Shown here: positions 196 through 51,189 of the stretch, piece by piece
How the letters are laid out: every line of letters begins with the position of its first letter
Numbering within the stretch: the stretch's first letter is position 1
DNA from: Octopus bimaculoides
Lineage: Eukaryota
DNA: 53,338 nt
NCBI RefSeq assembly: GCF_001194135.2
Contig: NC_068982.1
Location: forward strand, 190,517,549 to 190,570,886
Direction: 5' to 3'
Notes under the pieces: model-generated
Told to the model about the DNA's origin: nothing
Databases searched by the model: none
What the model saw: only the letters and a program-made list of their open reading frames with translations
Made by a program: the position numbers and the translations under genes

Positions 196-269
<74 letters not shown>
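196..269. repeat. (AAT)n microsatellite
   Basis: About 24 perfect AAT units. Confidence 0.98.
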
Positions 270-2596
270 GGCACCCGGGCACGACAAGATTTTCAACTTG
301 TAGTTAAACATCTAACAGGAACGCATAAAAAGCTGGCTGAGAACTTTAATAAACTACTAGCAGAGCCTGCCTGAATGGCTCGCGGAAGGGAGAACGATCC
401 CAATTCCCAAATCCACTGAAATGCAAACCTAAAATTATAGACCGATAACTTGTCTCCCAACAATTTACAAAGCCTTTACTGCAATAATATCGTAGAGGAT
501 GGGCAAACATCTGGACGAAAACAACCTGTTTCCAGAAGAGCAGAAGGGATGCTGCAAGGGCTCATATGGCTGCAAAGATCAGCTACTGATCAATAAAGCC
601 ATAACTAAAAACAGCCATAGAAAGAAGAAAGGTCTAAGTATGGCGTGGATCGATTACCGGAAGGAATTTTGATAGTATTTCCCAAACATGGATCCTAGAA
701 ACACTAGCCATGAACAAGGTAGCACCAATAATTATAAAATATAAAACACATTCCATGAATAAATGGCAGATACTGTTAGAGCTCCAGACAAAGCAGTGAC
801 TCATAAAAACCAAAGCAATCCCCATTAGAAGAGGAATATTCCAGGGTGACACGATCTCTCCACTCCTTTTCTGCTTGGCACTGACACCTTTATCTGACAT
901 GCTAAACAGAACTCGATGTGCATATAATTACGTCAAAACAATCAGCCATCTCTTAAATATGGATGACCTAAAACTGTACACTGCAAACGATAAACAGCTG
1001 GAAACATTACTACAGACAATACATGGATTTACCAACGAAATAAACATGAAAGTTGGCTTAGAAAATGTGCCAAAGCAACATTGAAAAGACGAAAACTAGT
1101 TAAGATTAACAACATCACACTAGATAAAGCAAATGAAATAAGAGAATTAGACCAAAGCCAGCCATACAAACACTTAGGAATAAATGAACCAGATACGATA
1201 CAACACACAAAAATGAAAGAGAAGATAAGAAAAGAATGCTATAGAAATGTTAGATTAATACAGAAAACAGAGCTCAATGCGAAAAACAAGATAATAGGTA
1301 TCAATACTGTAACTGGGAAGGCTAGAGCCTTCCCAGTTACGGCTACAATATTCTTAACTGGATTTTAAATGAACAAATCAAGATAGACAGGAAAACAAGA
1401 AAAATAATGACAGGTTTTAGGATGCACCATCCAAAATCTGACATAGAAAGGTTATATATACAACGTATCGGAGGTGGTAGAGGCTTTATGCAGCTAGAAA
1501 ACAATTACAAAATAACCACCATGGGACTACAGAAATACCTACTTCAGAAACAAGGAAAACTAATACAAATAGCCACAAAACACGAACAAAACAAAAAAAC
1601 TGTTTTCAGTCTTTAAGGAAGGTGACAAATACAAAAAAGAAGTCATAGTACCTAAAAACTATGAAGAAAAAGAAGAAACAACAAAAGCTGTAAAACAACT
1701 GAAATCCAAACTAAAAACTGGAGCAACAACGGACCATGATAAAACGATGGCAAGAAATGTCCCTTCGTGGCAAATATTGGGTTGAACTAAAAGCAAAGGA
1801 AATAGACAAAGCAAAATCTCAACAATGGCTGAGAAGCTCAGGACTCAAAACAGAGACTGAAGGATTTTTAATTGCAGCACAAGACCAAAGCCTTTCCATC
1901 AGAAATCACCAAAAACATGTAATGAAAAGAAACATAACAAGTGACTGTAGAATGTGTGGAGATGGACAAGAAACAATAAATCATATTATCTCTGGCTGCC
2001 CAGTCCTGGCTAAGAAGGAATATATTCATAGACACGACAGAGCTGGGACCTATATACACTGGAAGCTATGCCAACACTATGGAATAACAACAGAAAAAAG
2101 ATGGTATAGACACACCCCAGAAAAGGTCACAGAAAATGAGAAAGCAACAATACTATGAGATATGCCAATGCACACAAATAGAGAAATTAAGGCCAATAGG
2201 CTGGCTATAGTCGTCAGAGATCACCAAGAAAACAAATGCTACCTAATCAATGTATCAATACCAACAGATGACAATGTTTCTCTGAAATATACGGAGAAAC
2301 TTTCAAAATTAGAAAGACCTAGAAATAGAGGTAACTCGAATGTGGAGTCTAAAGACAGAAACAATTCCTATCATAGTAGGTGCATTAGGTATGATAAAAA
2401 AATATTCAGCCAAATACATAAAAAAAAAACACTAGGACTAACAAGTATATATAACATACAGAAAATAGCACTCTTAGGTACCGCACACATCCTACGTAAA
2501 ACACTTCAATACAGTGAAAATATGAGCAAAACAACAAACTACAGCACGTGCCCACGGCACGCATAGCTGCGCTCGGTAGTGCAGGGAAAGTGCATG
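270..2596 (+). mobile_element. 5'-truncated, frameshifted R4/Dong-like (RLE-type) LINE: RT, CCHC finger, restriction-like endonuclease
   Basis: RT motifs WIDYRK(A)FDS, RGIFQGDTISPLLFC, NMDDLKL (YMDD-like), YKHLGI; zinc knuckle CRMCGDGQETINHIISGC; RHD motif; RLE region ANRLAIVVRD..CYLINVSIP (PD to LA, D to N decay); C-terminal IQKIALLGTAHILRKTL. Confidence 0.92.
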
Positions 2597-2927
2597 GACA
2601 ACAGAATCAATGTGAAAGAAGAAAAAATAAACAACTCTGACGATTTGAAGTGGGAAATACGAAGGTTGTGATCAATGAAGAGAGTAGACGTGATACCAAT
2701 AGTAATTGGTGCACTTGGAAGTATCAGTACTCAACTACTATCATGGCTGAAAAAGATCGGTGCAAATGTGAAGATAGAACACCTACAAAAATCAGCATTG
2801 CTTAGAACACTAAGAATTCTTCGCAGGATTCTTGAAGCATGACCAGTAAACAAGTGTTACCTTAGTCTGCTGTCTGTGAACAGCTGGCACTTTCCACCAT
2901 ACCCAGCAAAATAAGCTGTGAGGTTTC

Positions 2928-2930
<3 letters not shown>
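2597..2930 (+). mobile_element. 3' end of a second R4/Dong-like LINE family
   Basis: DDLKWEIRRL..KRVDVIPIVIGALG..IEHLQKSALLRTLRILRRILEA*, then a 3' UTR and a (TAA)n tail. Confidence 0.85.
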
Positions 2931-2996
<66 letters not shown>

Positions 2997-3010
2997 TAAT
3001 AATAATAATA
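2931..3010. repeat. (TAA)n microsatellite / LINE tail
   Basis: About 26 units with one aac interruption. Confidence 0.97.
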
Positions 3011-3077
3011 CCCAAGGCACACAGAGCTGCGCTCGGTAGTGAAGTGAAAGCACGTTATAAAAATAAAACTACTGAAC
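3011..3077 (+). mobile_element. Extreme 3' tip of the same LINE family as 270-2596
   Basis: cccaaggcacacagagctgcgctcggtagtg matches cccacggcacgcatagctgcgctcggtagtg at about 2550-2581 and ends in (AAT)n. Confidence 0.8.
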
Positions 3078-3095
3078 AATAATAATAATAATAAT

Positions 3096-3790
3096 CAATA
3101 CACCATCTCATCTCGGGATATACTGTGCTGACACCAAACGAATACAAAAATCGCCACGATAGGGTAGGACAATATTTACATTGGAAAATTTGTAAACGCT
3201 ACAAAATCACTACTCCTGCTTACTCATATAAACATCATCCTGAGTCAGCCGGAAGGTAAAAATGTCAGTATTCTCTGGGACTTCCCAGTCAACACCGACA
3301 GAATGATCCAGGATAATCGACCAGACATAGTCATTAAAGAGAGAGAAGAGAATAATTGTAGACTAATAGATGTATGTATTCCCACGGATAAAAAAAAAAC
3401 ATATCTGTAAAGGAATTTGACAAATCAAGTAAACATAAAGACCTGGAAATAGAAATACAAAAGATCTGGCATCTTAAAGCGAGAACTGCTCCTGTTATTG
3501 TGGGTGCCCTTGGTATGATAAGAAAGGGATGCCAGAAACATCTAGATAAGGTCCCAGGAGAACCATGTCTCAGAGGAATCCATATGATTGTGTTGACAAG
3601 TACTGCCAACATCTTTAGAAAAACCCTATCAATTTAGATGTCTGTGTTGTATTACGTGAAGATATTTCGCTACTAACCCTGCTACTCCCCAATCTTTCAC
3701 CCATACTGTAACATCAATTATCCTTCACTCACCCTAGGATGCTGGGTGTGACTCGACAAGTGATTATAACAAATATGCAGATTAAAAGTA
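3096..3790 (+). mobile_element. 3' end of a third R4/Dong-like LINE family
   Basis: EYKNRHDRVGQYLHWKICK, DNRPDIVIK (intact PD), LIDVCIP, KHKDLEIEIQKIWHLKARTAPVIVGALGMI, STANIFRKTLSI*, then UTR and (AAT)n. Confidence 0.88.
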
Positions 3791-3805: not shown

Positions 3806-4007
3806 CCTTTCGACTGAAATTTGGGGGAGGGGAACTTGTCGATTACATTCACCTCAGTGTTTCACTGGTACTTGATTTATCGACCTCGGAAGGATGAAAG
3901 GTAAAGTCGACCTCGATGGAATTTGAACTCAGAGCGTAAAGACAGACGAAATGCCGCTAAGCATTTTGCCCGGAGTGCCAACGCTTCTCCCAGGTCGCCT
4001 CCTCAAT
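3806..4007 (-). mobile_element. tRNA-derived SINE, family A
   Basis: Reverse complement has the head gaagcgttggcactccgggcaaaatgcttagcggcatttcgtc, B-box-like gagttcaaattcc and the central block ctttcatccttccgaggtcgataaatcaagtaccag shared with copies at 33.9, 36.2, 41.0 and 50.9 kb. Confidence 0.8.
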
Positions 4008-4148
4008 AATAATGTTTATAATAACAGATTTGATAATGATGACGATAATGATGACGATAATGATGATGATGATGATGGTGCAGGTGGTGCTGGTGCTGGT
4101 GGTGAAGACGACGACGACGACGATGATGATATTATTATTATTATTATT

Positions 4149-4585: not shown

Positions 4586-4664
<79 letters not shown>
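4586..4664. repeat. (ATT)n microsatellite
   Basis: About 26 units. Confidence 0.97.
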
Positions 4665-5059
4665 CGATAAGTTTTGTGTTCTTTCACACTTGCGCCAACT
4701 TATTTACGTATGTAGTTAGTAAAGTGTCAGTGTCGCTTTACTTAGAATACATTTTTGGTTACCTTTTATTTGTTTTTTTCTATTTTTCATTGATTTCTTT
4801 GTAATGGTAACTTGAAGATTTTTTACAGAGTTTAAGAGCATCACTTTAATTGATATTCGCGTTAAACTAAGGCCAGGTTCGATCCCCGTTTTGTAGTAGC
4901 CGGTGTTGATGGGCGGGGGTGCAGATATCTGGATATATTCTTTGTGGGTGACATTGAATCAATAGAAACTGTCCGAAAACCAATGAGACGAAACGTTGTT
5001 GTCCTTTTATGGCACGTGAGAAATTTGGTATGACTGGAACCTAGACTATAAGCTTTCAT

Positions 5060-5280
5060 CTTGTTACATGTTTCAGCCATTTGACTGCGGCCATGCTGGA
5101 GCACCACCTTGAAGAATTTTAGTCGAACGAATTGAGCCCAGTGCTTATTTTTCAAAAGCCTGGCACTTATTCTATCAGTCTTTTGCTGAATCGCTAAGCC
5201 ACGGGGACGTAAACACACCAACACCGGTTGTCAAGCGGTGGTGGGGGACGAACACAGACACAAACACACACACACATGTC
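5060..5280 (-). mobile_element. tRNA-derived SINE, family B, 3' half
   Basis: tttcagccatttgactgcggccatgctggagcacc...acaccaacaccggttgtcaagcggtgg, shared with copies at 14.2, 16.9, 20.1 and 43.9 kb. Confidence 0.8.
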
Positions 5281-6579: not shown

Positions 6580-7643
6580 AACATGACTGGTCTGCCAGTC
6601 TCTCTACAGAATAAAGCTACAACACTTTATGACGATCATGCATGACACCTGCAGTAAGTTTGCTCCAAGAAAGCAGAAAAAATATAACACCCAGAGACAG
6701 GAGGATCCTAATGAGACAACGGGCAAACCTCTCAAATCGTTTAAAGGAGCCACTAAAGGATGACAAACGATCCTGCCTCAAACGAACATTACTCGAGATC
6801 GAAAATGAACTCAAGCGCTCCCATTAAAAGGAGAGGGCAGAAAAAGAGGCCAGGCCTGTTGAAAATATTAAGACAAACCCTAAAACCTTCTATAGATATG
6901 CAAAAGAATCTGCTTCAGTACAGTATAATAAAATAGGGCTACTATTTGAAGAAAATGGCTCACCGACTGCAGACCTCAGAGGATCAGTGAAATACTGAAT
7001 GTGCAATACAGGAATGCTTTCACCACTCCACTGGGACACTTGCAAGTAGCTATGCCTAATGAGTTCTTTGGCTCCACAGATCTACACAACAAAATAACGA
7101 CCATTGACAGTATCAACATAGAGGAAACTGATGTGATATCAGCCATTGATGGGATGAGCTGAAACTCAGCAACAGGCCCCGACAGATTCCCAGCAATCCT
7201 CCTAAAGAAATGCAAAGGGGCTCTAGCTAGACCACTTCAAATTCTCTTCCAGAGGTTACTCACAATAGGGAGGCTTCCCAAAAAGTTAAAGGAATGCATT
7301 ATATGCCCTGTCCATAAGGGTGGTAGCAGGGCAGACGCTAAGAATCATAGACCTGTCTCTCTAACTTCCTCTGTCAGCAAAGTCATGGAGTGCATGGTCA
7401 GGAAGAAACTAATTGTGTTCTTTGAAGATAATGACTTGCTTCCTGAGATTCCAGCATGGTTTTCGCTCAGGAAGAAACTGCCTTCCATACCTTCTGCAAC
7501 ACTATGACTGAATATTGAAACAATTAATGAATCGCTCAAACGTGGATGTGATATATCTGGACTTTGCAAAGGTCTTTGATAAAGCTGATCATGGGATGAT
7601 ATGTCACAAACTACGGAGACTCGGCATAACTGGGAAAGTCGGG

Positions 7644-7646
<3 letters not shown>
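6580..7646 (+). mobile_element. CR1-like LINE ORF2 fragment (linker plus N-terminal RT), pseudogenised
   Basis: NPKTFYRYAK, GPDRFPAILLKKCK..LARPLQILF, ICPVHKGG..NHRPVSLTSSVSKVME, VDVIYLDFAKVFDKADHG..KL..LGITGKV. Stops and frameshifts; ends in (TG)n at 7647-7702. Confidence 0.92.
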
Positions 7647-7703
<57 letters not shown>

Positions 7704-9055
7704 ATGCAAGTGCATGTGTGTGCTTGCTTAACGTTTGATATTCCGTAACTTCGTTTTGATTCTTTCCTATACATTTTGATTCAGGCCGGAATTCTGATAG
7801 AAATTATGGGGAAGTCGACTTTTAGAATTGATGTCAAATAGTGTCACAAAGCTGCTTTTGAAGTATTTTGAAACCATTGTATTCACTGAACCTGAAGAAT
7901 GTCTTTGGTTAAAAGCTTACAATTACCTGCTCTAAGTGAGTCCCGGGAGCCGCCTAAAACTGTTCCGCTCGTTCATAACAAGAATTCATTAAAACAATTT
8001 CTTCCAGGGAAACATTGTTAGGACTTCATATGAAAAGGAAATATTAGCACAATTTTCTTGGCAATATCAACTGGCTAAATGATTGGAATGGATTTAATTA
8101 GAATGGAGAATGGGTCACGGTAACCAGCAGCTGATAGTGAATCCAAAGTTTCCAAGTTCAAATACTTCTTTCGTAAACTTTACCTGTTATAGTCCTGGAT
8201 CAATGAATCAAATACTAGTAAACTACTAGTGCCAGTGTAATTGGTGATAGATCTATCGCAAAATTTTAGACATTGGGTCTTATGTTAGGAAGCAGCAGAA
8301 ACAACAAACCGCTCTACAGTATTCCCCATCGTACTCCTGTCGTCTGGAATCTTTCCAGAACCTTTCACGGTCGATAAAACCCGAGCGTCAATGACATTAG
8401 TATCGATTGAATCTGTCATACACTTTCCCGATAAAATATTGGATTCCTTTGATTGCAAATAAAGAGACGACCCCCCACCCAACCTTTTTTTTGTTTTGTT
8501 CAGAAAGTGAGCTTCTGATATTGTGAGATTCATGGATTCCTTTTTCATTTTCACTTTGTCTTATTTAATAGTGGCAATGTTAAAACCGCTTAGAATTAAA
8601 CGACGGTCGAAAACGAATGACAGTCTCAACTCTGCAGGCACTGGTCGGGTTTTTTCTTTGTCATTCGCCACTTCTCTGTCAATACTTTCAATGGTTTTGT
8701 GTTTAATAAAATGTTATTTATATATATATATAAATGAGAATGTGTGTGTGTCTGTCTGTCTGTCTGTCTGTCTGTGTGTTTCCCTAAAACTCGAGAACTA
8801 CACAACCAATTTCATTCAAATTTTACACATGTTTTACTTAGGGTTCCGGTTGTGTTTTAGTCAAAAAAAGTTTTTAACTTCTTGCATAGTTCGAGCCCAC
8901 AGCAACATCATATCTCCTCCACTATTTAAGTATTACGTGTCAAAAGTGAAACAAAAACACTCATGTCAAATACTTTCACTTTAAAAATGAAACTATTCCA
9001 CTAACTGATACAATCACATTTCGATACTGTAATGACAGATACTTTCACTTTAATG

Positions 9056-29517: not shown

Positions 29518-29754
29518 ATGTAGGGGAATGGACAATGACAGCTCAATGTATGCTATGAATGTTTCAATAGGATGGTAATTTATTTGCAATCATTATATTA
29601 CGTAAACCAAAAACGCCACGCATCTATTCAGGCATTGTAGAATAATCAGTTTCAAACACATACATACATACATACATAACATACATACATGCATACATAC
29701 AGCAATCTTTTAAGGTCAGCAGTCATCATTTTCTTTTGTGAATGCTAATAGTTT

Positions 29755-29793
29755 CTCTGTTGCTACTGTTGCTGTTGTTGTTGTTGTTGTTGC

Positions 29794-29833
<40 letters not shown>

Positions 29834-29878
29834 GCTGTTGTTGTTGTTGTTGTTGTTGTTGTTACTATTGTTGTTTGG
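29755..29878. repeat. (TTG)n/(CTG) imperfect trinucleotide array
   Basis: Directly visible. Confidence 0.95.
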
Positions 29879-30447
29879 CCCGCCGGTTAGAATTGATTGG
29901 TGATTATCAAAGAATTCCAATAACAGCCAATAAGTCTAACTTTTCTTTTCCAGACATTGTGTGTATCTTGGAGTATCAGTTACTGTGATCTCTATTTTTT
30001 ATACTCGTAGGAAGGGATTTGAGGGTAACTTAGCTGCTATTTCAATCAGGTCACACAATTACGTAGAGGTTTCCCCGACTCAGTTTCCGCCCATTGTTAA
30101 TAACGTTGTGTTAGTACTCACGCAAGCATTGTTTCATACAGGTAGCGTCCCTAAGCAATTTACTTCCATTACTATTTTGCCACACGAACTTATCAATGTG
30201 AGTTATACTTCCTCGCCAGGATCAGGGATGGTCATATCTACTTCATGTTTATATACTTATACTCTTTAATTTGGTCTGTTTTGTTCTGCAGATGAGGACC
30301 AATAAGGATGAAACTTATCCTAAGGAACCATCTTGTTTGTCGAAGTTCACATTAAATTATTTATCATTGCTCTTCCAATTAACGTTTTAGACATCATTCT
30401 GTAGCTTCATTTTCATTAATTATCATTACTAAGCCCATTAAATATTG

Positions 30448-33429: not shown

Positions 33430-33863
33430 TTCCTTTGTCTACGGGGAGTTCTACGAAATTTCGTGATGTGCTTAACAATATTGTTTATTGTAATTTATGC
33501 AAATCTGTGAGACCTGATATCTTACCGGTGCTGTTTTTCTATTTTCAACTTGAAAATGTCCAACGTTGACGGAATACATTGACGTATGTCTCTACAAATG
33601 CTTCTACCTGGAAACCAGTGTCTTTCTTCCGTTGATGTTTGGTTAGTAACATAATGCACCGTTGTCTTTCATGGTAATGCGGTCTACATATTGTAACATG
33701 AAATACATTTGGAACGAGAAGGAAGGCAGTCGGTATCGATGGAAGTGTGGGCTGATTCAATACTGCGGGGGGAATCAAAATGAACATTTAATCAAAATGA
33801 TTTTTACTCCTGTAATGAGAAAAAAATATTCTTAAGACGAAGGACGAAAATACGGTGATGATC

Positions 33864-34078
33864 TGACAGAATCGCTAGCATACCGGGAAAAAAGCTTAGC
33901 GGCATTCCGTCCGAATTTTTTATGTTTTGGGTTCAAATTCCGCCGCGGTCGACTTTGTATTTTCATCTTTTCGGGGTTGATAAATTAAGTACCAGTTGAG
34001 TACTGGGGTCGATGTGATCGACTAAATTCCTTACAGCCTCGAAATTTCTGGCCTTGTGCTAACATTTGAAAACAATAT
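33864..34078 (+). mobile_element. SINE family A
   Basis: gacagaatcgctagc..gggttcaaattccgccgcggtcgactttg..ttttcggggttgataaattaagtaccagttgag. Confidence 0.82.
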
Positions 34079-35653: not shown

Positions 35654-36174
35654 TAAAATAAGTGGTTCTTCGACATGCTAGAAGTAACAGTTACATCTCT
35701 CACAACTTCTACTCTATCATCTATGATCGTTAATGCACTGATCTCTGTAGGTGGGAAATGGATATGATGGCCACGACTGGAATGTCTTTTTATCATGATT
35801 ATGCTCGATCAGGGATAGCTCTAACTTGCAGCTAAACAACAACTAAAGAAGACTTTATGCAGCAAGACATATTTTTCTAGTAAAATAACAAAAAAAGTAG
35901 AATGGGGGAGGGGTGAAAAATAAAACGTTTCGGGTGTAGTCCTTCTTCAGTGAAAAGTCGACTGGAGAGAAATTGATTAGAGATAGCAGTGTTTTAAATT
36001 TTCTAAATTAAAAAAGCACTATAGCTTAGTGCCCTGAAAGTAAAGAAGTATGAATAAGAGAATGCAGTACTTCTTATACAAAATGCCCCACAATTAGGGG
36101 CGCAAAGCCTTCGTCATGGAAGTGCTCAGGCAGAGTTGACATGAACGAAACAACGGCAACTATAGATATTGAAT

Positions 36175-36390
36175 TCATTCAGATTTTGGCACAAAGCCAG
36201 CAATTGTTCGGGAGGTAAGAAGTTGATTACGTCGACCTCTAATATTCAGCTAGTACTTATTTTATCGATCTCGAAAGGATGAAAGGCAAAGTTAACATCG
36301 GAGGAATTTGAAAACAGAACGTAAAGACGGACGAAATGCCGCTAAACATTTTGACCGGCGTGGTAACAATTCTGCTAACTCACCACCTTA
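36175..36390 (-). mobile_element. SINE family A
   Basis: Reverse complement ggtgagttagcagaattgttaccacgccggtcaaaatgtttagcggcatttcgtccg..ctttcatcctttcgagatcgataaaataagtac. Confidence 0.82.
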
Positions 36391-42971: not shown

Positions 42972-43229
42972 TATGTATATATATATATACACACAAATAA
43001 ATATTATATAATGATTTCTTTATTATTTATTTATTGTTTATTGTTTTTATTATTGTTTAGTATATATCATCTGTTTATATGCATATACGTATAATGTGTG
43101 CGTTGTATATATATATGTGGGGGGGGGTGTAACACTTTTTTGAACGAATTCAAGAAGTGCACAATATATAAGAGTTCACATATTTATTTAAAACCAAGTC
43201 CTCTTTCCGTTGCTATTGGCAACTATTGT

Positions 43230-43640
43230 TGACTTATTGTGATATGTGTGTATCTGTGTGCATGAATGTATGTATGTGTATGGGTGTAATTGCTGTATTA
43301 GCGCTCAAGTGGAAGGTTATCTGGTATACAGCAGGTCAGTATGTGATTACACCATACTGTCTTATTTTTACATGTCTTACGAAATTCTTGGCCAGGCATC
43401 GTACACTGTATGAAGGATTTCGGGTCCTCAATGCAACCAAAGTAGAATTCTCTTGCTGGGTAATTTATCTTCGGGTCCTTGGGTTTGCAATGTTTGACAT
43501 TAGATTTGCATACAATGGCGCGATTGTTGATGCAAGCTTTCAGATTGGCACTGAATACGGTGTCGGGAAGACATCTACCTTTCTTCGGGGGATAAGTTTT
43601 ATCACAAATTATGAATCTGGAAATCATCAAAATAAGAGAT
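43230..43640 (-). mobile_element. Penelope-like GIY-YIG fragment
   Basis: KGRCL..IVCKSNV..EFYFGCIEDPKSF..KNKTVWCNHILT: decayed CPLxGxCL / VVYK / FYIG / STxLSNHIW. Confidence 0.65.
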
Positions 43641-43703
43641 AAAATATTTTAAAGAACAACTTTACCATGTATCAGTTTCCAATACTCGCACGTACACACA
43701 CAC

Positions 43704-43745
<42 letters not shown>

Positions 43746-43914
43746 GCGCGCGCAGGCAGACACACACGCACCAAGGCAGGCAGACACAAACACACATGCA
43801 TACACACACATGCATACACACACACATGCATACACACACATGCATACACACACACATGCATGTACGTATATGTGTGTAAATAAATAAATACAAGCATGCA
43901 TATATCTATTCCTT

Positions 43915-44110
43915 TATTCTTTTAAAGATTTCAGTCATTTGACTGCGGCCATACTGGAGCACCGCCTTTAGTCGAGCAAATCGACCTCAAATCTTTCTAA
44001 GCCCAGTAGTTATTCTATCGTCCGTTTTGCCGAACCGCTAAGTAATGGTGACGTAAACACACCAGCATCAGTTATCAAGCGATGTTGAGGAACAAACACA
44101 GACACACAAC
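43915..44110 (-). mobile_element. SINE family B, 3' half
   Basis: tttcagtcatttgactgcggccatactggagcaccgcctttagtcgagcaaatcgacc..ttgccgaaccgctaag. Confidence 0.8.
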
Positions 44111-44574
44111 CATAATTGTATTTGTATGTATGTGCGTACGTACGTATGTACGTTTATGTGTGTGTGTGCGTATGCGTGTGTGTCTGTGTGTATGCATGCA
44201 AGGTAACCCTAACTCTAACCCTCTCCTCCCCATTCCTTCTATCAATTTATTCTGACTGACCACTAACCAGTACCCTTTCCCTCTCTCTCTCTCTCTCCGC
44301 CTTCCATTTCTTTCTTTTTTCATTTCTATTTTCCTCTCTTCCTGTTTTTGATTTGACCATAAAAACATTCCAAACTTTTAAGTCTCTTCAAATAAAACCC
44401 TCGATTCAATAACACTGTTTACAAACTCTATGCTTGGAAGGTACAAGAATCTTATGTGTATACCATTCTGCCTAAATAATGGAACTGAAAATACAATATC
44501 CCTGCATATCTCACGTTTACTTCCATTCCTCCACTTCACTCTCTATTTCGTATCTTATCTATAATAACTATTGC

Positions 44575-44725
44575 TTAACCATTTTCTCACACCGTCTCCG
44601 GTGAAGAGATATATAAAATATCCCGGAAACAACTGTAAGACCTTCTCTTTATAAATGTTCTGAAATCTTTCACAACCTTGGATTTTTATCTAAGATTTTT
44701 ATCTCATTCTGAAAAAAATTTATAT
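44575..44725 (+). mobile_element. Penelope-type terminal repeat, copy 1, with degenerate hammerhead (44594-44642)
   Basis: gtct-CCGGTGA-agagatat.ataaa.atatccc-gGAAAC-aact-GTA-agac; the core box carries two substitutions. Confidence 0.75.
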
Positions 44726-45200
44726 ATATATATATATATATNNNNNNNNNNNNNNNNNNNNNNNNNNNNNNNNNNNNNNNNNNNNNNNNNNNNNNNNNNN
44801 NNNNNNNNNNNNNNNNNNNNNNNNNNNNNNNNNNNNNNNNNNNNNNNNNNNNNNNNNNNNNNNNNNNNNNNNNNNNNNNNNNNNNNNNNNNNNNNNNNNN
44901 NNNNNNNNNNNNNNNNNNNNNNNNNNNNNNNNNNNNNNNNNNNNNNNNNNNNNNNNNNNNNNNNNNNNNNNNNNNNNNNNNNNNNNNNNNNNNNNNNNNN
45001 NNNNNNNNNNNNNNNNNNNNNNNNNNNNNNNNNNNNNNNNNNNNNNNNNNNNNNNNNNNNNNNNNNNNNNNNNNNNNNNNNNNNNNNNNNNNNNNNNNNN
45101 NNNNNNNNNNNNNNNNNNNNNNNNNNNNNNNNNNNNNNNNNNNNNNNNNNNNNNNNNNNNNNNNNNNNNNNNNNNNNNTGGGTCATGCATCAGCATGCAG

Positions 45201-45338
45201 ATATAAATTGACAGAATGAGATATAAAAAAAGACAAGGCAGTAAATAGATTTCATAACATTTATCAAGAAAAGGTCTCACAGCTGTTTCCAGGATATTAT
45301 GTATATCCCTTCATCAGAGACGGTTCGAGAAAATGTTT
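45201..45338 (-). mobile_element. Penelope-type terminal repeat, copy 2, hammerhead at 45274-45323
   Basis: gtct-CTGATGA-agggatat.acata.atatcct-gGAAAC-agct-GTG-agac. Core intact; the triplet is GUG, not NUH. Confidence 0.8.
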
Positions 45339-45366
45339 GAATATTAATTATTGTAAAGAAGATATG

Positions 45367-45498
45367 AAACATTTTCTTGCACCGTCCCTGATGAAGGGAT
45401 ATATAAAATATACCGGAAACAGCTGTACGATTTTTCTTGAGGTATGTTATGAAATCTATTTACTGCCTTTTTTTCTAATTTCATTCTGTCAATTTATA
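45367..45498 (+). mobile_element. Penelope-type terminal repeat, copy 3, inverted relative to copy 2, hammerhead at 45384-45431
   Basis: gtcc-CTGATGA-agggatat.ataaa.atatacc-gGAAAC-agct-GTA-cgat. Core and GUA intact; stem I mismatched. Confidence 0.8.
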
Positions 45499-45639
45499 TA
45501 TATATAAATTGTCATAAAGGATCAGATGTGTTATATATGCCTTGTAAGTAATGACAAGCTCCTCAACTTTCCATTATCCTCTTAGAAGGGGTAACTTCTT
45601 AAAACCGAAAACCTTACCTACTAGCTTTTTTCTATACAA

Positions 45640-46040
45640 GCACAGACATTGGCTGTCTCCAAAAGCTCAAATGATCTTAAATTATGGCAAGCTAAAGAAA
45701 GTTATTTTCCAGAAATTTCGATTTGTCGACTTTAAACTTACTCTCGAAACTAACATAATATCAGTTAATTTCTTAGATGTTCGAAATTATCTTAAGCTTT
45801 AAGAGGATCGAACGCCGGAATCAGTGACATAAACACGGGGTCATGATACCACATTTTCTTAAGAACGTTATAAAGAGAGTCAGTAAAATTATTTCAAATT
45901 TGTGATCCTAGTAAGGAAGTTTTTGATAGGATCCCGCCCTTTTGCTACACGCTCAAAGATATTAGATTCAACGCTGAAATCACTTACATTGCCAACTCGT
46001 AAGTCTGCAAAAGGAAAAGGCATAGAAACCTCAATTAGAA
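45640..46040 (+). mobile_element. Penelope-like RT thumb fragment
   Basis: FKLTLETNIISVNFLDV, INTGS, ISNL..SKEVFD, FNAEITYI..KRKRHRN. Confidence 0.75.
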
Positions 46041-47047
46041 CTCTTCTGAAATCTCGCTAAATGCGAGGCTGGGCATAACTAAAACCCGCTTCAGATTGAC
46101 GTGCAGAGGATATAGAAGATTGCATAATAGGCATGCGCATCAAATTATGATTTGCTGTACTGCAGATATTTAATAGGATATTAATCAGGAGGCCACGCGT
46201 CTAGTAAGCCTGGCCGCTCATGCAGAGATATTTCTACATATCTCTGGAATAGATCCTGCAATTCGAAGTCTATAGACTCAAACGATACAGCTGATCTAAA
46301 GCGCTACATCGGTATGGCGGAAAAAACTGTTGAACTAACGACTTTTTCAACCTTTCTTTTTTTTCATCAGGCACATGCAGCCATGCAATGCAATAAAACT
46401 TACAAACTATGATGTGTTATTGAAAGAGATAAGGGCGGNNNNNNNNNNNNNNNNNNNNNNNNNNNNNNNNNNNNNNNNNNNNNNNNNNNNNNNNNNNNNN
46501 NNNNNNNNNNNNNNNNNNNNNNNNNNNNNNNNNNNNNNNNNNNNNNNNNNNNNNNNNNNNNNNNNNNNNNNNNNNNNNNNNNNNNNNNNNNNNNNNNNNN
46601 NNNNNNNNNNNNNNNNNNNNNNNNNNNNNNNNNNNNNNNNNNNNNNNNNNNNNNNNNNNNNNNNNNNNNNNNNNNNNNNNNNNNNNNNNNNNNNNNNNNN
46701 NNNNNNNNNNNNNNNNNNNNNNNNNNNNNNNNNNNNNNNNNNNNNNNNNNNNNNNNNNNNNNNNNNNNNNNNNNNNNNNNNNNNNNNNNNNNNNNNNNNN
46801 NNNNNNNNNNNNNNNNNNNNNNNNNNNNNNNNNNNNAAGGATGGAGTCGATGCACGTGTGGTATCCCTGATAAAAATAGTAAATAAACATCCCTCAAATT
46901 ACACCACTTCGGAGAAAATACAAACCAAACAATGTAAAACCCCAGTGAGATGCACATAAATCGGGATGGGCATGACTGGATTACCTCTAATTAAAGGTTT
47001 GCACGAACGAAAGAATAAACGCAAGAAAAAGACTGTAATGTACTTAC

Positions 47048-47345
47048 GAACTGTCATCTCCGGGATACGGAAGATAATCGCATGTCTTACTCTTTAAATC
47101 ACAAGAATTACTAATTTTTAAAAGTTCCGTCGTTTGGCGAGCCGATGCGGGTGGTTTACAATGTTCAGCAGGAATGATGTTACAACTTCTGCTAGCGCTA
47201 TCAAACAGTCTGTTGTTCGGGCATATTCCAACACAACCGACCATTATGTCACTGCAGACAACGAATCTACGAGGATCCGAGGCATCGTGTTGCACAAGGA
47301 TCTTTTGCTGGAGTGCCTGACGATTACACAGCAGATGGATTTTAG
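47048..47345 (-). CDS. Internal coding exon: chitin-binding type-2 (peritrophin-A/CBM14-like) domain plus start of a second domain
   Basis: Acceptor tactttctgcttcttctag| (AG at 47347-47346) and donor TC|GTAAGTA (GT at 47047-47046). 298 nt, phase 1 in and phase 2 out (2+294+2), open throughout. Translation (x)KIHLLCNRQALQQKILVQHDASDPRRFVVCSDIMVGCVGICPNNRLFDSASRSCNIIPAEHCKPPASARQTTELLKISNSCDLKSKTCDYLPYPGDDS(S). C-x10-CP-x4-FD, C-x12-C and C-x7-C match ChtBD2 spacing; YLPYPGD resembles the start of the next domain. Confidence 0.8.
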
Positions 47346-47559
47346 CTAGAAGAAGCAGAAAGTACACTCAGGGTTAATGAGGCGAGCGCTAGAAGAAGAA
47401 AACAGCAAATTTAAATCATCCGAGATACCACGTAGATAAATCAAGCCTGAGGCATTACGACTGGGAAGCAACCTTCTTAAACACTGACTGCTGTTGTTAC
47501 GAGGTAGCAGTACTATGACACCGAACATCAACTGCCACTACTTAAACTTGTAGTTGGGA

Positions 47560-48060
47560 TCACCAGCGTATCGACCGTATAAATTTCACCAAAATCTATT
47601 AAAACTAAAAAGGTACTTACTGGTGTTAACGGATATGGAATTGTCACAATCTGAAAAGAAGAGAAATACAAGAAGAGAAATATTTTATATACAATGGAAG
47701 ATATTGATACTTAATTTATATACCTATATATTGTTACCGTACGTTATTCTAATAGCGAAAGATTGTCTTCGACCTAAATGAGGTTGGATTAAAATTATTT
47801 GAGATATATAGAAATATTTTTCGATAGTTGTAGATTCTACTTAATTATTTTGTCCGTTATAATTTTGTTAGTTTTTAATTGTAATTGAGATGTAGTTGAA
47901 TGGCTAACGCTTATAATACATAGGCATTTGAATGAATTTTTTTTCACACGGAATTTCGTCTATCTTTAAACCTAAGCTCTGATGAGATTTATATAAGAGA
48001 ACTGAATTGCTTATATATCAAAAAATGTATGTAAGTCGAAACAAATTGCTGGCTTTTTCT
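47560..48060 (+). mobile_element. Possible Penelope-like 3' end terminating in a hammerhead variant (47974-48055)
   Basis: Weak RRE.FYIQ..LILN remnant; aagct-CTGATGA-gattt..aagtc-GAAAC-aaatt-GCT-ggctt. Confidence 0.5.
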
Positions 48061-49310: not shown

Positions 49311-50339
49311 TACCGCATGTATATATACATAAAAATATCATATGTATAAAGAATTTTATAGAATTTATGAAATATATAACGCAATTATGTGTGTATATAT
49401 ATATATATATNNNNNNNNNNNNNNNNNNNNNNNNNNNNNNNNNNNNNNNNNNNNNNNNNNNNNNNNNNNNNNNNNNNNNNNNNNNNNNNNNNNNNNNNNN
49501 NNNNNNNNNNNNNNNNNNNNNNNNNNNNNNNNNNNNNNNNNNNNNNNNNNNNNNNNNNNNNNNNNNNNNNNNNNNNNNNNNNNNNNNNNNNNNNNNNNNN
49601 NNNNNNNNNNNNNNNNNNNNNNNNNNNNNNNNNNNNNNNNNNNNNNNNNNNNNNNNNNNNNNNNNNNNNNNNNNNNNNNNNNNNNNNNNNNNNNNNNNNN
49701 NNNNNNNNNNNNNNNNNNNNNNNNNNNNNNNNNNNNNNNNNNNNNNNNNNNNNNNNNNNNNNNNNNNNNNNNNNNNNNNNNNNNNNNNNNNNNNNNNNNN
49801 NNNNNNNNNNNNNNNNNNNNNNNNNNNNNNNNNNNNNNNNNNNNNNNNNNNNNNNNNNNNNNNNNNNNNNNNNNNNNNNNNNNNNNNNNNNNNNNNNNNN
49901 NNNNNNNNNNNNNNNNNNNNNNNNNNNNNNNNNNNNNNNNNNNNNNNNNNNNNNNNNNNNNNNNNNNNNNNNNNNNNNNNNNNNNNNNNNNNNNNNNNNN
50001 NNNNNNNNNNNNNNNNNNNNNNNNNNNNNNNNNNNNNNNNNNNNNNNNNNNNNNNNNNNNNNNNNNNNNNNNNNNNNNNNNNNNNNNNNNNNNNNNNNAA
50101 TGTTTATTATCAATGTTACAACCGTTTTCGGCATATTTTACTTTCTCACGATCAGATTAAATCAAAAAATAAATTTAGTTTTTAATTCTTTCTTGAACGA
50201 ATCTTCACGGAGAAATGGTATTCAACTTCAGAGAATTATTGCTGATCGAACAGGAATTTCCTGCTTTCGATTGTCAGATAAATTTATTCGATCTTTTTCC
50301 TCCACTTGGCAGTCATCGCCATATTTGTGAAAAGAAGTT

Positions 50340-50408
50340 TGAAGGTACGTAGCTTAGAAGTTACGGTATTCGGCCTAGAAATGTAAGATTTTGAGTTCGA
50401 TTCCCAGC
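50340..50408 (+). mobile_element. tRNA-like SINE head (family C type)
   Basis: gaaggtacgtagcttagaagttacggtattcggc..tgagttcgattcccagc. Confidence 0.55.
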
Positions 50409-50510
50409 GATACACACACATACATACGCACACACACATACACACACACACAAATATATATATATATTTATATACACACATACACACAAATACACTCACA
50501 CACACACACA

Positions 50511-50821: not shown

Positions 50822-51189
50822 AACACCGAAAGCGCATTGCGTGCTTCTATCGCTGGTCACTTAGTTGCTGCTGTAAAGTGCCCATCTCTGTGAGGAATCT
50901 TTATTAAAATCCATGGTGAAAAGGGGGAGCGAGCTGGCAGAATCGTTAGCACGCCGGACAAAACGTTTAGTGGCATTTCGTCCGTCCTTACGTTCTGAGT
51001 TCAAATTCCTCCGAGGTCGATTTTACCTTTGATCCTTTCGGGGCCGATAAAATAAGTCCCAGTCGAGGATTGAGATCAGCGTAATCGACTTAACTCCTCC
51101 CCCGGAATTGTTGGCCATGAGCTAAAACTGGAAGCCAATATTCATGGTTCAAAGGGTAATTAAATAAAATGAAGTCTAGTTATTGACTG
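50822..51189 (+). repeat. Duplicated block copy 2 (contains a more complete SINE A)
   Basis: See 40887-41216. This copy retains two segments missing from copy 1. Confidence 0.9.

What the first reader, a model, noticed from the sequence alone, without database searches (positions are those of the whole stretch)
47048..47345. Hidden exon encoding an atypical chitin-binding domain that lacks Cys2 but has an extra Cys
Seen: splice-bounded, fully open 298-nt exon whose C3-C4 (10), C4-C5 (12) and C5-C6 (7) spacings match ChtBD2/peritrophin-A. The canonical second Cys is Pro (SD-P-RRFVVC) and an extra Cys sits in the C3-C4 loop (VGCVG). The following half-domain also has Asp where Cys2 is expected (YPGD-D-SS) and an extra Cys (KTCD). 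Established: ChtBD2 normally has six Cys in three disulfides. Inference: a re-wired disulfide variant in a multi-domain chitin-binding protein, a class used in cephalopod beak, radula and gut lining. It is the only convincing host-gene exon in 53 kb, so the introns would be very long.
Basis: partly seen in the sequence, partly recalled or inferred. Interest (0 to 1): 0.7.

Follow-up and report, generated by a model that had tools for sequence, protein, structure and literature searches.

The report
Annotated octopus chitin-binding-like gene exon
The stretch is a real coding exon of an already catalogued Octopus bimaculoides gene for a small secreted protein with three peritrophin-A (CBM14) type domains; its odd cysteine pattern is real and conserved across cephalopods but lies within known variation of this family, so the finding is largely ordinary.

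Summary
The 298-nt exon (minus strand, 47345..47048) is real. Spliced to a 30-nt micro-exon (47650..47621), a terminal exon (43616..43298) and a signal-peptide exon, it gives exactly XP_014772866.1 / UniProt A0A0L8HEW1. That is Octopus bimaculoides LOC106871090 "isoform X2", named "Chitin-binding type-2 domain-containing protein". So the exon is not hidden, it is not the only exon in the window, and the two introns that can be measured are 275 nt and 3.4 kb.

The cysteine observation holds. All three domains lack canonical Cys2 (Pro63, Asp136, Pro203) and carry extra cysteines. All 20 cysteines are kept in five octopod gene copies, and 18 are kept in a cuttlefish transcript. dN/dS is about 0.3.

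Missing Cys2 is the norm among the nearest relatives, which are mollusc and annelid four-cysteine domains. It also occurs in the solved mite allergen Der p 23, the best structural match to a model of domain 1. The part that is unusual is that Cys6 is kept and seems to pair with a relocated cysteine.

Chitin binding is inferred, not shown; two solved relatives are reported not to bind chitin. "Isoform X2" is probably a separate tandem gene whose first exon lies in the assembly gap 49411-50098.

The parts
50099..50470 (-). 5' flank (promoter-proximal region) of the gene
   Evidence: It aligns at 85-91% with the sequence just upstream of exon 1 in O. vulgaris and O. sinensis. In the O. vulgaris locus L003 this is about 4645-5245, and exon 1 starts about 330 nt further on. 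The alignment stops exactly at the gap edge, 50099.
49411..50098 (.). Assembly gap (688 N) predicted to hide coding exon 1 (start codon and signal peptide)
   Evidence: Inference. No exon-1-like sequence is found anywhere in the sequenced part of the window. In gap-free relatives exon 1 lies about 1.9 kb upstream of the micro-exon, which falls at about 49.5-49.6 kb here. The upstream homology ends at the gap edge.
47621..47650 (-). Coding micro-exon of 30 nt, encoding (D)CDNSISVNT(T), including Cys30
   Evidence: The acceptor is ttcttttcAG| and the donor is |GTAAGT. The phases fit exon 1 (G+AT = Asp) and the next exon (A+CT = Thr). Homologous micro-exons are present in all related loci.
47346..47620 (-). 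Intron of 275 nt
   Evidence: GT...AG boundaries.
47048..47345 (-). The finding: a 298-nt coding exon covering residues 39-138, i.e. all of domain 1 (C45, P63 at the Cys2 position, C69, C76, C80, C93, C101), a linker, and the first half of domain 2 (C120, C127, D136 at the Cys2 position)
   Evidence: A structure model of domain 1 has pLDDT 79 and its best PDB matches are all CBM14 structures.
43617..47047 (-). Intron of 3431 nt, containing assembly gaps at 46439-46836 and 44742-45178
   Evidence: The donor is |GTAAGT at 47047-47042 and the acceptor is tttccAG| at 43618-43617.
43298..43616 (-). Terminal coding exon covering residues 138-243 and the TAA stop (43300-43298): the second half of domain 2 (C142, C153, C166, C174) and domain 3 (C181, C199, P203 at the Cys2 position, C209, C220, C227, C233, C234)
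   Evidence: TC + A = Ser keeps the reading frame. Pfam CBM_14 scores 25.1 bits on this exon alone and 37.1 bits on the two exons joined.

Best explanation
Shown:
- The stretch is the third of four coding exons of a small gene on the minus strand of Octopus bimaculoides chromosome record CM046602.1. The gene spans about 6.5 kb, roughly 50.1 to 43.3 kb in the window.
- Its product is the 243-residue protein already in RefSeq and UniProt as LOC106871090 'isoform X2'. It has an N-terminal hydrophobic signal-like peptide and three tandem, divergent peritrophin-A/CBM14 domains.
- The four core cysteines C1, C3, C4 and C5 are present in every domain. Cys2 is replaced in all three (Pro63, Asp136, Pro203).
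- The family is found in both octopods and cuttlefish, is under purifying selection, and is tandemly duplicated in O. bimaculoides and in Argonauta.

Inferred:
- The protein descends from the lophotrochozoan branch of CBM14 that has lost the C2-C6 disulfide.
- In domains 1 and 2 the C-terminal Cys6 position is used again but bonded to a relocated partner (Cys76-Cys101 and Cys127-Cys174).
- Cys30 and Cys199 may form a bond between the N-terminus and domain 3. Cys227-Cys234 would be an octopod-only extra pair.
- The secreted protein most likely binds and cross-links chitin fibrils in an extracellular matrix. It would do so through the two aromatic positions per domain that contact chitin in the squid beak domain (F66/F86, F139/F159, F206/W226).
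- The window copy is a separate tandem gene whose own first exon is lost in the assembly gap 49411-50098.
For: Gene model:
- Splice sites and phases fit.
- The spliced CDS is identical to XP_014772866.1 / A0A0L8HEW1.
- The window is 100% identical to GCA_001194135.2 over 1528 and 3240 nt.

Family:
- Pfam CBM_14 gives 31.6 bits on the whole protein, in 3 stretches.
- The family profile hits 14 solved CBM14 entries.
- The domain 1 model has pLDDT 79.4. Its top 14 PDB matches are all CBM14, the best being Der p 23 at rmsd 0.7 A.

Cysteine map: alignment A3 and the alignment with 7BWE.

Conservation:
- All 20 cysteines are kept in 5 octopod gene copies.
- 18 are kept in the Sepia esculenta transcript P0057 and in the genomic homologue L005, which has the same intron position and phase.
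- dN/dS is 0.27 between the two O. bimaculoides copies and 0.30 against O. vulgaris.

Relatives without Cys2 and Cys6.

Pairing hints: the loop cysteine always co-occurs with Cys6 (4 of 4 cases). The cysteine 15-17 residues before C3 co-occurs with a C-terminal cysteine in P0019 as well. The canonical pairs C1-C3, C2-C6 and C4-C5 are stated in PMC10619976.

Aromatic contacts: Y164 and F183 of DgCBP-3 (bioRxiv 10.1101/2020.01.08.899344) map to positions conserved in all three domains.

Own first exon.
Against: - No transcript or junction read of the O. bimaculoides gene itself could be examined. Expression evidence comes only from a cuttlefish homologue.
- Disulfide pairing was not determined. 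The tools return no coordinates, the co-occurrence cases are few and phylogenetically dependent, and the full-length model failed (pLDDT 35).
- The domain 1 model was driven by an alignment of CBM14 domains, so its fold match is not independent of the sequence assignment.
- Chitin binding is not shown. The two structurally closest solved proteins, Der p 23 and the mollusc three-domain protein EHEP, are reported not to bind chitin (PMC10619976).
- Domain 1 lacks the aromatic-rich first strand seen in domains 2 and 3.
- Exon 1 in the gap is an inference. RefSeq instead joins the window exons to the first exon of the upstream paralogue.
Confidence: 0.6

Rival explanations
1. Same gene and fold, but the ligand is not chitin. 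The three re-wired domains would form a compact secreted module that binds something else, such as a polyphenol or xenobiotic, another glycan, or a protein. The precedent is the Aplysia three-domain protein EHEP.
For: - EHEP (8IN3), a mollusc digestive-fluid protein of three peritrophin-A domains, is the best profile hit among solved structures (E 6e-24). It binds phlorotannin, not chitin.
- Der p 23, the best fold match and also lacking Cys2, is reported not to bind chitin (PMC10619976).
- Odd cysteine counts in domains 1 and 3 (7 and 7) suggest an inter-domain bond and hence a compact arrangement.
Against: - Both aromatic positions that stack on chitin in the squid domain are kept in all three domains and in all copies.
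- There is no specific sequence relationship to EHEP; a single-sequence search does not find it.
- EHEP has the canonical six cysteines.
Confidence: 0.3
2. The RefSeq model is right. The window exons would then be an alternative three-exon cassette of one gene, spliced to the single first exon about 20 kb upstream and mutually exclusive with the paralogous cassette, rather than a separate gene.
For: - This is the deposited model: isoforms X1 and X2 share residues 1-28.
- No second exon 1 is visible in the sequenced parts of the window or of L001.
Against: - In gap-free Argonauta each tandem copy has its own exon 1 about 1.9 kb upstream of its micro-exon.
- The region upstream of exon 1 in O. 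vulgaris and O. sinensis aligns to window 50470-50099 and stops exactly at the gap edge. This places the expected exon about 330 nt inside the gap.
Confidence: 0.12
3. The window copy is a decaying duplicate (pseudogene) of the upstream paralogue.
For: - It is the more diverged of the two copies relative to O. vulgaris and O. sinensis: 77.7% against 83% identity in the finding's exon, and 86.5% against 89.4% in the terminal exon.
- Its first exon is not visible.
Against: - All three visible exons are open, with consensus splice sites.
- All 20 cysteines are kept.
- dN/dS is 0.27-0.30 overall and 0.18 in domain 1 against the paralogue.
Confidence: 0.03

Closest known systems
XP_014772866.1 / UniProt A0A0L8HEW1, Octopus bimaculoides LOC106871090 isoform X2, 'Chitin-binding type-2 domain-containing protein'
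   Same: Identical. The three window exons plus the upstream exon 1 translate to exactly this 243-residue sequence.
   Different: Nothing differs in sequence. The deposited model borrows exon 1 from the neighbouring paralogue, which is probably an artefact of the assembly gap. No paper mentions the gene.
Der p 23 / Der f 23, house-dust-mite allergens (PDB 4ZCE, 5ZJL)
   Same: CBM14 fold. Pro occupies the Cys2 position within the same D-P-x-x-F-x-x-C motif (DPHKFYIC against DPRRFVVC and DPKSFIQC). It is the best structural match to the domain 1 model (rmsd 0.7 A over 39 columns, TM 0.76 on the target).
   Different: It is a single domain with four cysteines, no Cys6 and no extra cysteines. It comes from an arthropod. 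It is reported not to bind chitin (PMC10619976).
Lophotrochozoan four-cysteine 'P-T-D-x-x-K-F-I-Q-C' multi-domain proteins (for example Littorina XP_070176467.1, Dreissena XP_052249573.1, Mactra KAL4227026.1, Pomacea XP_025113623.1, Owenia CAH1789632.1, Argonauta GAB1597859.1)
   Same: These are the nearest relatives outside the cephalopod family (E 1e-17 to 1e-4). They keep C1, C3, C4 and C5, lack Cys2, often have Pro at that position, and share the FIQC motif.
   Different: They also lack Cys6 and the extra cysteines. Most have 3-11 domains and some have other modules. They pass Pfam CBM_14 much more strongly, at 75-117 bits against 32.
Aplysia kurodai EHEP, '25 kDa polyphenol-binding protein' (PDB 8IN3, 8IN6)
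   Same: A mollusc secreted protein of about 230 residues made of three peritrophin-A domains. It is the top profile hit among solved structures and the second-best fold hit.
   Different: It has the canonical six cysteines per domain with C1-C3, C2-C6 and C4-C5 bonds. It binds phlorotannin and not chitin (PMC10619976). There is no close sequence relationship.
Dosidicus gigas beak protein DgCBP-3, domain CBD-gamma (PDB 7BWE)
   Same: A cephalopod CBM14 domain and the best single-sequence PDB hit to domain 2 (E 0.039). The chitin-contacting aromatic positions are conserved.
   Different: It has the canonical Cys2 and Cys6. Its octopus counterpart is another gene (XP_052824458.1, 'obstructor-E-like'), so the window gene is not a DgCBP orthologue.
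Sepia esculenta transcript homologue (Logan SRR20545815 contig 11245, P0057) and decapodiform-like genomic homologue (ENA ERZ21867824 ctg84616l, L005)
   Same: Same architecture: signal peptide, N-terminal cysteine and three domains. 18 of the 20 cysteines are shared. In L005 the intron sits at the same position and phase inside domain 2.
   Different: Only about 33-41% identity. Cys227 and Cys234 are absent. Neither is annotated.

Membership tests
Peritrophin-A / ChtBD2 / CBM14 (Pfam PF01607) | Sequence match to the PF01607 profile at or above the gathering score (22.1 bits) | tested here: met
   The exon alone gives 19.3 bits, E 0.0012, below the cut-off. The terminal exon alone gives 25.1 bits. 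The two exons joined give 37.1 bits. The whole protein gives 31.6 bits, E 1.8e-7, in three stretches.
Peritrophin-A / ChtBD2 / CBM14 (Pfam PF01607) | Six-cysteine framework C1-x(11-24)-C2-x5-C3-x(9-14)-C4-x12-C5-x(6-7)-C6 with bonds C1-C3, C2-C6 and C4-C5 | tested here: not met
   C1, C3, C4 and C5 are present in all three domains. Cys2 is replaced by Pro63, Asp136 and Pro203. Cys6 is present in domains 1 and 2 only. The canonical pairing is taken from PMC10619976. Solved and Pfam-accepted members such as Der p 23 also fail this feature, so it is typical of the family rather than obligatory.
Peritrophin-A / ChtBD2 / CBM14 (Pfam PF01607) | CBM14 fold | tested here: met
   The domain 1 model has pLDDT 79.4. 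The top 14 Foldseek PDB matches are all CBM14 structures: Der p 23, EHEP, CHIT1, Avr4, Blo t 12 and tachycitin. Caveats: E-values are weak (0.02 or more) because the domain is small, and the model was guided by an alignment of CBM14 domains.
Peritrophin-A / ChtBD2 / CBM14 (Pfam PF01607) | Aromatic residues at the ligand face (3 residues before C3, and after C4 in the 'G-x-x-F/W' position) | tested here: met
   F66/F86, F139/F159 and F206/W226 align with Y164/F183 of DgCBP-3 CBD-gamma, which contact chitopentaose.
Peritrophin-A / ChtBD2 / CBM14 (Pfam PF01607) | Binding to chitin | not testable with these tools
   This needs a binding assay. Some members of the fold do not bind chitin.
Four-cysteine CBM14 branch without Cys2 (Der p 23 type; lophotrochozoan FIQC domains) | Both Cys2 and Cys6 absent; only the C1-C3 and C4-C5 pairs remain | tested here: not met
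   Cys2 is absent in all three domains. Domains 1 and 2 keep a cysteine at the Cys6 position, and every domain has one to three additional cysteines.
Four-cysteine CBM14 branch without Cys2 (Der p 23 type; lophotrochozoan FIQC domains) | D-P-x-x-F-[IV]-x-C motif before C3 | tested here: met
   The motif reads DPRRFVVC in domain 1 and DPKSFIQC in domain 3. Pro is the commonest residue at this position in relatives (44 of 177 domains).
Obstructor / CPAP3 and squid beak DgCBP proteins | Orthology, or close sequence relationship, to canonical six-cysteine three-domain cuticle or beak proteins | tested here: not met
   The only link is a marginal hit to 7BWE (E 0.039). The octopus protein clustering with DgCBP-3 is XP_052824458.1, a different gene. 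The nearest relatives are four-cysteine mollusc proteins.
EHEP-like polyphenol-binding proteins | Three peritrophin-A domains in a secreted protein of about 230 residues | tested here: met
   243 residues with three domains. EHEP's architecture is taken from PMC10619976.
EHEP-like polyphenol-binding proteins | Specific sequence relationship to EHEP, and polyphenol precipitation | tested here: not met
   A single-sequence search of PDB does not recover 8IN3 at E up to 10. Only the general family profile does. Ligand binding is not testable here.
Secreted protein | N-terminal signal peptide | not testable with these tools
   No signal-peptide predictor is available. By inspection, MATSMNLLVFATVFIATLLHLSQA|L has a hydrophobic core and a small-x-small cleavage motif. 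The exon that encodes it is not in the sequenced part of the window.

The most novel reading that the evidence does not exclude
A family so far seen only in coleoid cephalopods (octopuses, argonaut, cuttlefish) has replaced the canonical C2-C6 disulfide of the CBM14 fold with a different substitute bond in each domain. An extra bond between the N-terminus and domain 3 would lock the three domains into one rigid module with a new binding specificity. That would be a natural example of disulfide re-engineering in a carbohydrate-binding scaffold.
Probability: 0.2. Interest if true: 0.4.

Novelty: already known. Interest (0 to 1): 0.2.

Why it matters
The practical value is modest.
- It corrects an annotation: 'isoforms X1 and X2' of LOC106871090 are most likely two tandem genes. 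The second gene's first exon would be lost in an assembly gap.
- It shows that the nearest mollusc and annelid relatives of this protein routinely lack the C2-C6 disulfide, and that cephalopods re-used the Cys6 position with new partners. This may interest people working on chitin-binding scaffolds or cephalopod chitinous materials.
- The protein is uncharacterised, small and secreted, so its ligand and disulfide map are easy to test.

It does not open a long-standing question.

Tried and rejected
- Open reading frame length as evidence: rejected. The window has 52 stop-free frames of at least 100 codons.
- Pfam on the exon alone: below the threshold.
- Single-sequence PDB search: only a marginal hit.
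- Structure prediction of the full protein with a 5-sequence alignment: failed, pLDDT 35, so it says nothing about how the domains are arranged.
- Disulfide pairing could not be read from the model, because no coordinates are returned.
- A search for the signal-peptide exon in the window found nothing, by tblastn including relaxed settings and by blastn with the exon-1 region of the paralogue.
- Literature searches for LOC106871090, LOC115230802 and the protein accessions found no paper.
- Pfam on ten other long frames of the window gave only a near-threshold zf-RVT match, so no other host gene was detected.
- Comparisons with Argonauta gave saturated synonymous distances, so only comparisons within Octopus give usable dN/dS.
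- The idea that the gene is an orthologue of squid beak DgCBP proteins was rejected.

Full report
**What is at the coordinates**

On the minus strand, 47345..47048 is a 298-nt stretch open in one frame. It is preceded by a pyrimidine-rich tract and AG, and followed by GTAAGT. It translates to (T)KIHLLCNRQALQQKILVQHDASDPRRFVVCSDIMVGCVGICPNNRLFDSASRSCNIIPAEHCKPPASARQTTELLKISNSCDLKSKTCDYLPYPGDDS(S).

Pro63 sits six residues before C3, where Cys2 is expected, and Cys76 lies in the C3-C4 loop. The next half-domain has Asp136 at the Cys2 position and an additional Cys127.

Openness alone proves nothing here. The window has 52 stop-free frames of at least 100 codons against about 6 in shuffles. The exon alone also falls just short of the Pfam CBM_14 threshold (19.3 bits against 22.1).

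**The exon is part of a gene with more exons in the window**

A second open frame on the same strand, 3.4 kb downstream, also looks like CBM14. Its acceptor (tttccAG|A at 43618-43617) fits the phase of the first exon exactly: TC + A = Ser, followed by FIIC, which is the missing C3 strand of domain 2. The two exons joined score 37.1 bits for CBM_14 in three stretches.

A 30-nt micro-exon lies 275 nt upstream, at 47650..47621. It encodes (D)CDNSISVNT(T) and has consensus splice sites and fitting phases.

**Identity of the gene**

A protein search found Octopus bimaculoides LOC106871090 isoform X1 (88% identical), an Argonauta hians protein (68%) and an O. sinensis fragment.

The window is 100% identical over 1528 and 3240 nt to the O. 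bimaculoides chromosome record CM046602.1, just downstream of the isoform X1 exons. By arithmetic, window position w corresponds to about 190,517,548 + w in that record.

Adding the annotated first exon, which lies about 20 kb upstream and outside the window, to the three window exons gives a 729-nt coding sequence. Its product is exactly XP_014772866.1 = UniProt A0A0L8HEW1, 'isoform X2', named 'Chitin-binding type-2 domain-containing protein'. The exon is therefore already annotated. No paper mentions the gene.

**Gene structure and the 'long introns' claim**

The measurable introns are 275 nt and 3431 nt. The isoform X1 exons (locus L001: 14606-14635, 15806-16103 and 19655-19975) form a tandem paralogous three-exon cassette.

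RefSeq lets both cassettes share one first exon. Three observations argue against this:
- In the gap-free Argonauta locus each of two tandem copies has its own signal-peptide exon about 1.9 kb upstream of its micro-exon.
- The same 1.9-kb distance holds in O. vulgaris and O. sinensis.
- The sequence just upstream of exon 1 in those two species aligns at 85-91% to window 50470-50099 and ends exactly at the edge of the gap 49411-50098. In those species exon 1 begins about 330 nt further on.

The most economical reading is that the window copy is a separate gene of about 6.5 kb whose first exon lies in that gap.

**Evolution**

All visible exons are intact in O. vulgaris, O. sinensis (where the contig ends before the last exon) and both Argonauta copies.

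Nei-Gojobori dN/dS is 0.27 between the two O. bimaculoides copies and 0.30 against O. vulgaris. Comparisons with Argonauta are saturated at synonymous sites.

Divergence between the two O. bimaculoides copies is mosaic:
- 28 differences in 47345-47210.
- None in 47209-47029.
- Six in 47028-46991.
- None down to 46837.

Synonymous distance is 0.42 in domain 1 but 0.09 in the linker plus domain 2. This suggests gene conversion, or possibly an assembly problem next to gaps.

A search of 1.84 billion representative proteins gave only 42 hits at E up to 0.001, and only the Argonauta protein below 1e-30.

More distant homologues with the same architecture exist:
- A genomic contig (L005, about 40% identity) has the same intron position and phase inside domain 2.
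- A full-length, intron-free contig comes from run SRR20545815. That run is a juvenile Sepia esculenta transcriptome (PMC9538352).

The family is therefore present in both octopods and cuttlefish, and is transcribed and spliced as predicted in a cuttlefish.

**The cysteine pattern**

An alignment of the three octopod domains with canonical and related domains (A3) shows C1, C3, C4 and C5 invariant. The Cys2 column holds P, T, D or R in octopods. The Cys6 column is occupied only in canonical domains and in octopod domains 1 and 2.

The mature protein has 20 cysteines, at residues 30, 45, 69, 76, 80, 93, 101 | 120, 127, 142, 153, 166, 174 | 181, 199, 209, 220, 227, 233, 234. All are kept in five octopod copies. 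In Sepia 18 are kept; Cys227 and Cys234 are octopod-only.

Missing Cys2 is not unusual in this neighbourhood:
- Among the 41 nearest proteins, about 155 of 168 domains lack both Cys2 and Cys6.
- Pro is the commonest residue at the Cys2 position.
- These proteins come from gastropods, bivalves, other Argonauta genes and an annelid. They pass Pfam CBM_14 strongly.
- The solved allergen Der p 23 has the same DP..F..C motif.

The canonical pairs are C1-C3, C2-C6 and C4-C5 (PMC10619976). What is particular to the cephalopod family is that Cys6 is kept without Cys2.

The loop cysteine co-occurs with Cys6 in all four cases seen. The cysteine 15-17 residues before C3 co-occurs with a C-terminal cysteine in octopod domain 2 and in another protein, P0019. 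From this I infer Cys76-Cys101 and Cys127-Cys174 as substitute bonds. The odd counts (7, 6, 7 in octopods; 7, 6, 5 in Sepia) suggest a possible Cys30-Cys199 link and an octopod-only Cys227-Cys234 pair. None of this was measured.

**Fold and function**

The full-length model was useless (pLDDT 35). Domain 1 modelled with an 84-sequence domain alignment reached pLDDT 79.4. Its 14 best PDB matches are all CBM14 structures, led by Der p 23 (rmsd 0.7 A over 39 columns), followed by Aplysia EHEP, human chitotriosidase, Avr4, Blo t 12 and tachycitin.

In the NMR study of the squid beak domain CBD-gamma, Y164 and F183 contact chitopentaose (bioRxiv 10.1101/2020.01.08.899344). These residues map to the aromatic three residues before C3 and to the F/W after C4. 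Both are conserved in all three octopus domains.

This supports chitin binding and, with three domains, cross-linking of chitin fibrils by a secreted protein. The inference is weakened because EHEP and Der p 23 are reported not to bind chitin. The tissue of expression is unknown. The octopus counterpart of the squid beak protein is a different gene.

**Verdict**

It is wrong in calling the exon hidden, in calling it the only exon, and in expecting very long introns.

The object is an already deposited but uncharacterised predicted protein. Its lack of Cys2 is typical of its branch. The relocated partner for Cys6 is a small, untested twist. Interest is low.

Noticed in passing
window 49411-50098 and 50099-50470: The RefSeq 'isoform X2' model borrows the first exon of the upstream paralogue. 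Homology to the region upstream of exon 1 in O. vulgaris and O. sinensis ends exactly at the gap edge, so the gene's own first exon is probably inside this 688-N gap.
   Followed up: yes
window 47345-46837 and 46287-46438, compared with L001 15732-16707: Divergence between the two tandem copies is mosaic. It is about 20% in the first 136 nt of the exon, then zero differences over 181 nt running into the intron. A 152-nt block is 100% identical and abuts assembly gaps in both copies. This is either gene conversion or a scaffolding artefact.
   Followed up: partly
L002 (Argonauta hians) 50278-56947 and 59837-65359: Argonauta has two complete tandem copies, 93-94% identical, each with its own signal-peptide exon. 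The deposited Argonauta protein (P0002) has a wrong N-terminus taken from about 40 kb upstream.
   Followed up: partly
L003 (O. vulgaris) 32550-32464, opposite strand: An extra, inverted copy of the signal-peptide exon (93-96% identical at protein level) with no recognisable downstream exons within the 72-kb locus. The deposited O. vulgaris model (P0005, 163 aa) is truncated and runs off into unrelated sequence.
   Followed up: no
window 43172-43639, plus strand: A 156-codon open frame lies antisense to the terminal coding exon. It is most likely a by-product of the coding strand, not a gene.
   Followed up: no
window 994-2566, plus strand: A run of open frames with a near-threshold zf-RVT match at 1736-2158 (25.8 bits against a cut-off of 27.5). 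This is a degraded non-LTR retrotransposon. A reverse-transcriptase-like peptide (VIYLDFAKVFDK...) at 7512-7745 found no Pfam match.
   Followed up: partly
window 50929-51139 (also 3815-4130, 33860-34078, 36158-36381): An interspersed repeat is shared with several places in the paralogue locus L001 and with the first intron of the O. vulgaris and O. sinensis genes, in the opposite orientation.
   Followed up: no
whole window: There are eleven assembly gaps totalling 4932 N. Microsatellites are very abundant ((TG)n, (TC)n, (TATC)n-like units, and a (TGC)n run at 29752-29985). They create many long spurious open frames.
   Followed up: partly
L006 (Sepia esculenta transcript contig) 258-2396 minus strand and 2553-3269 plus strand: The cuttlefish homologue sits on a 3.3-kb transcript contig next to an oppositely oriented 712-residue CCDC154-like reading frame. 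This is probably a chimeric assembly or overlapping transcripts.
   Followed up: no
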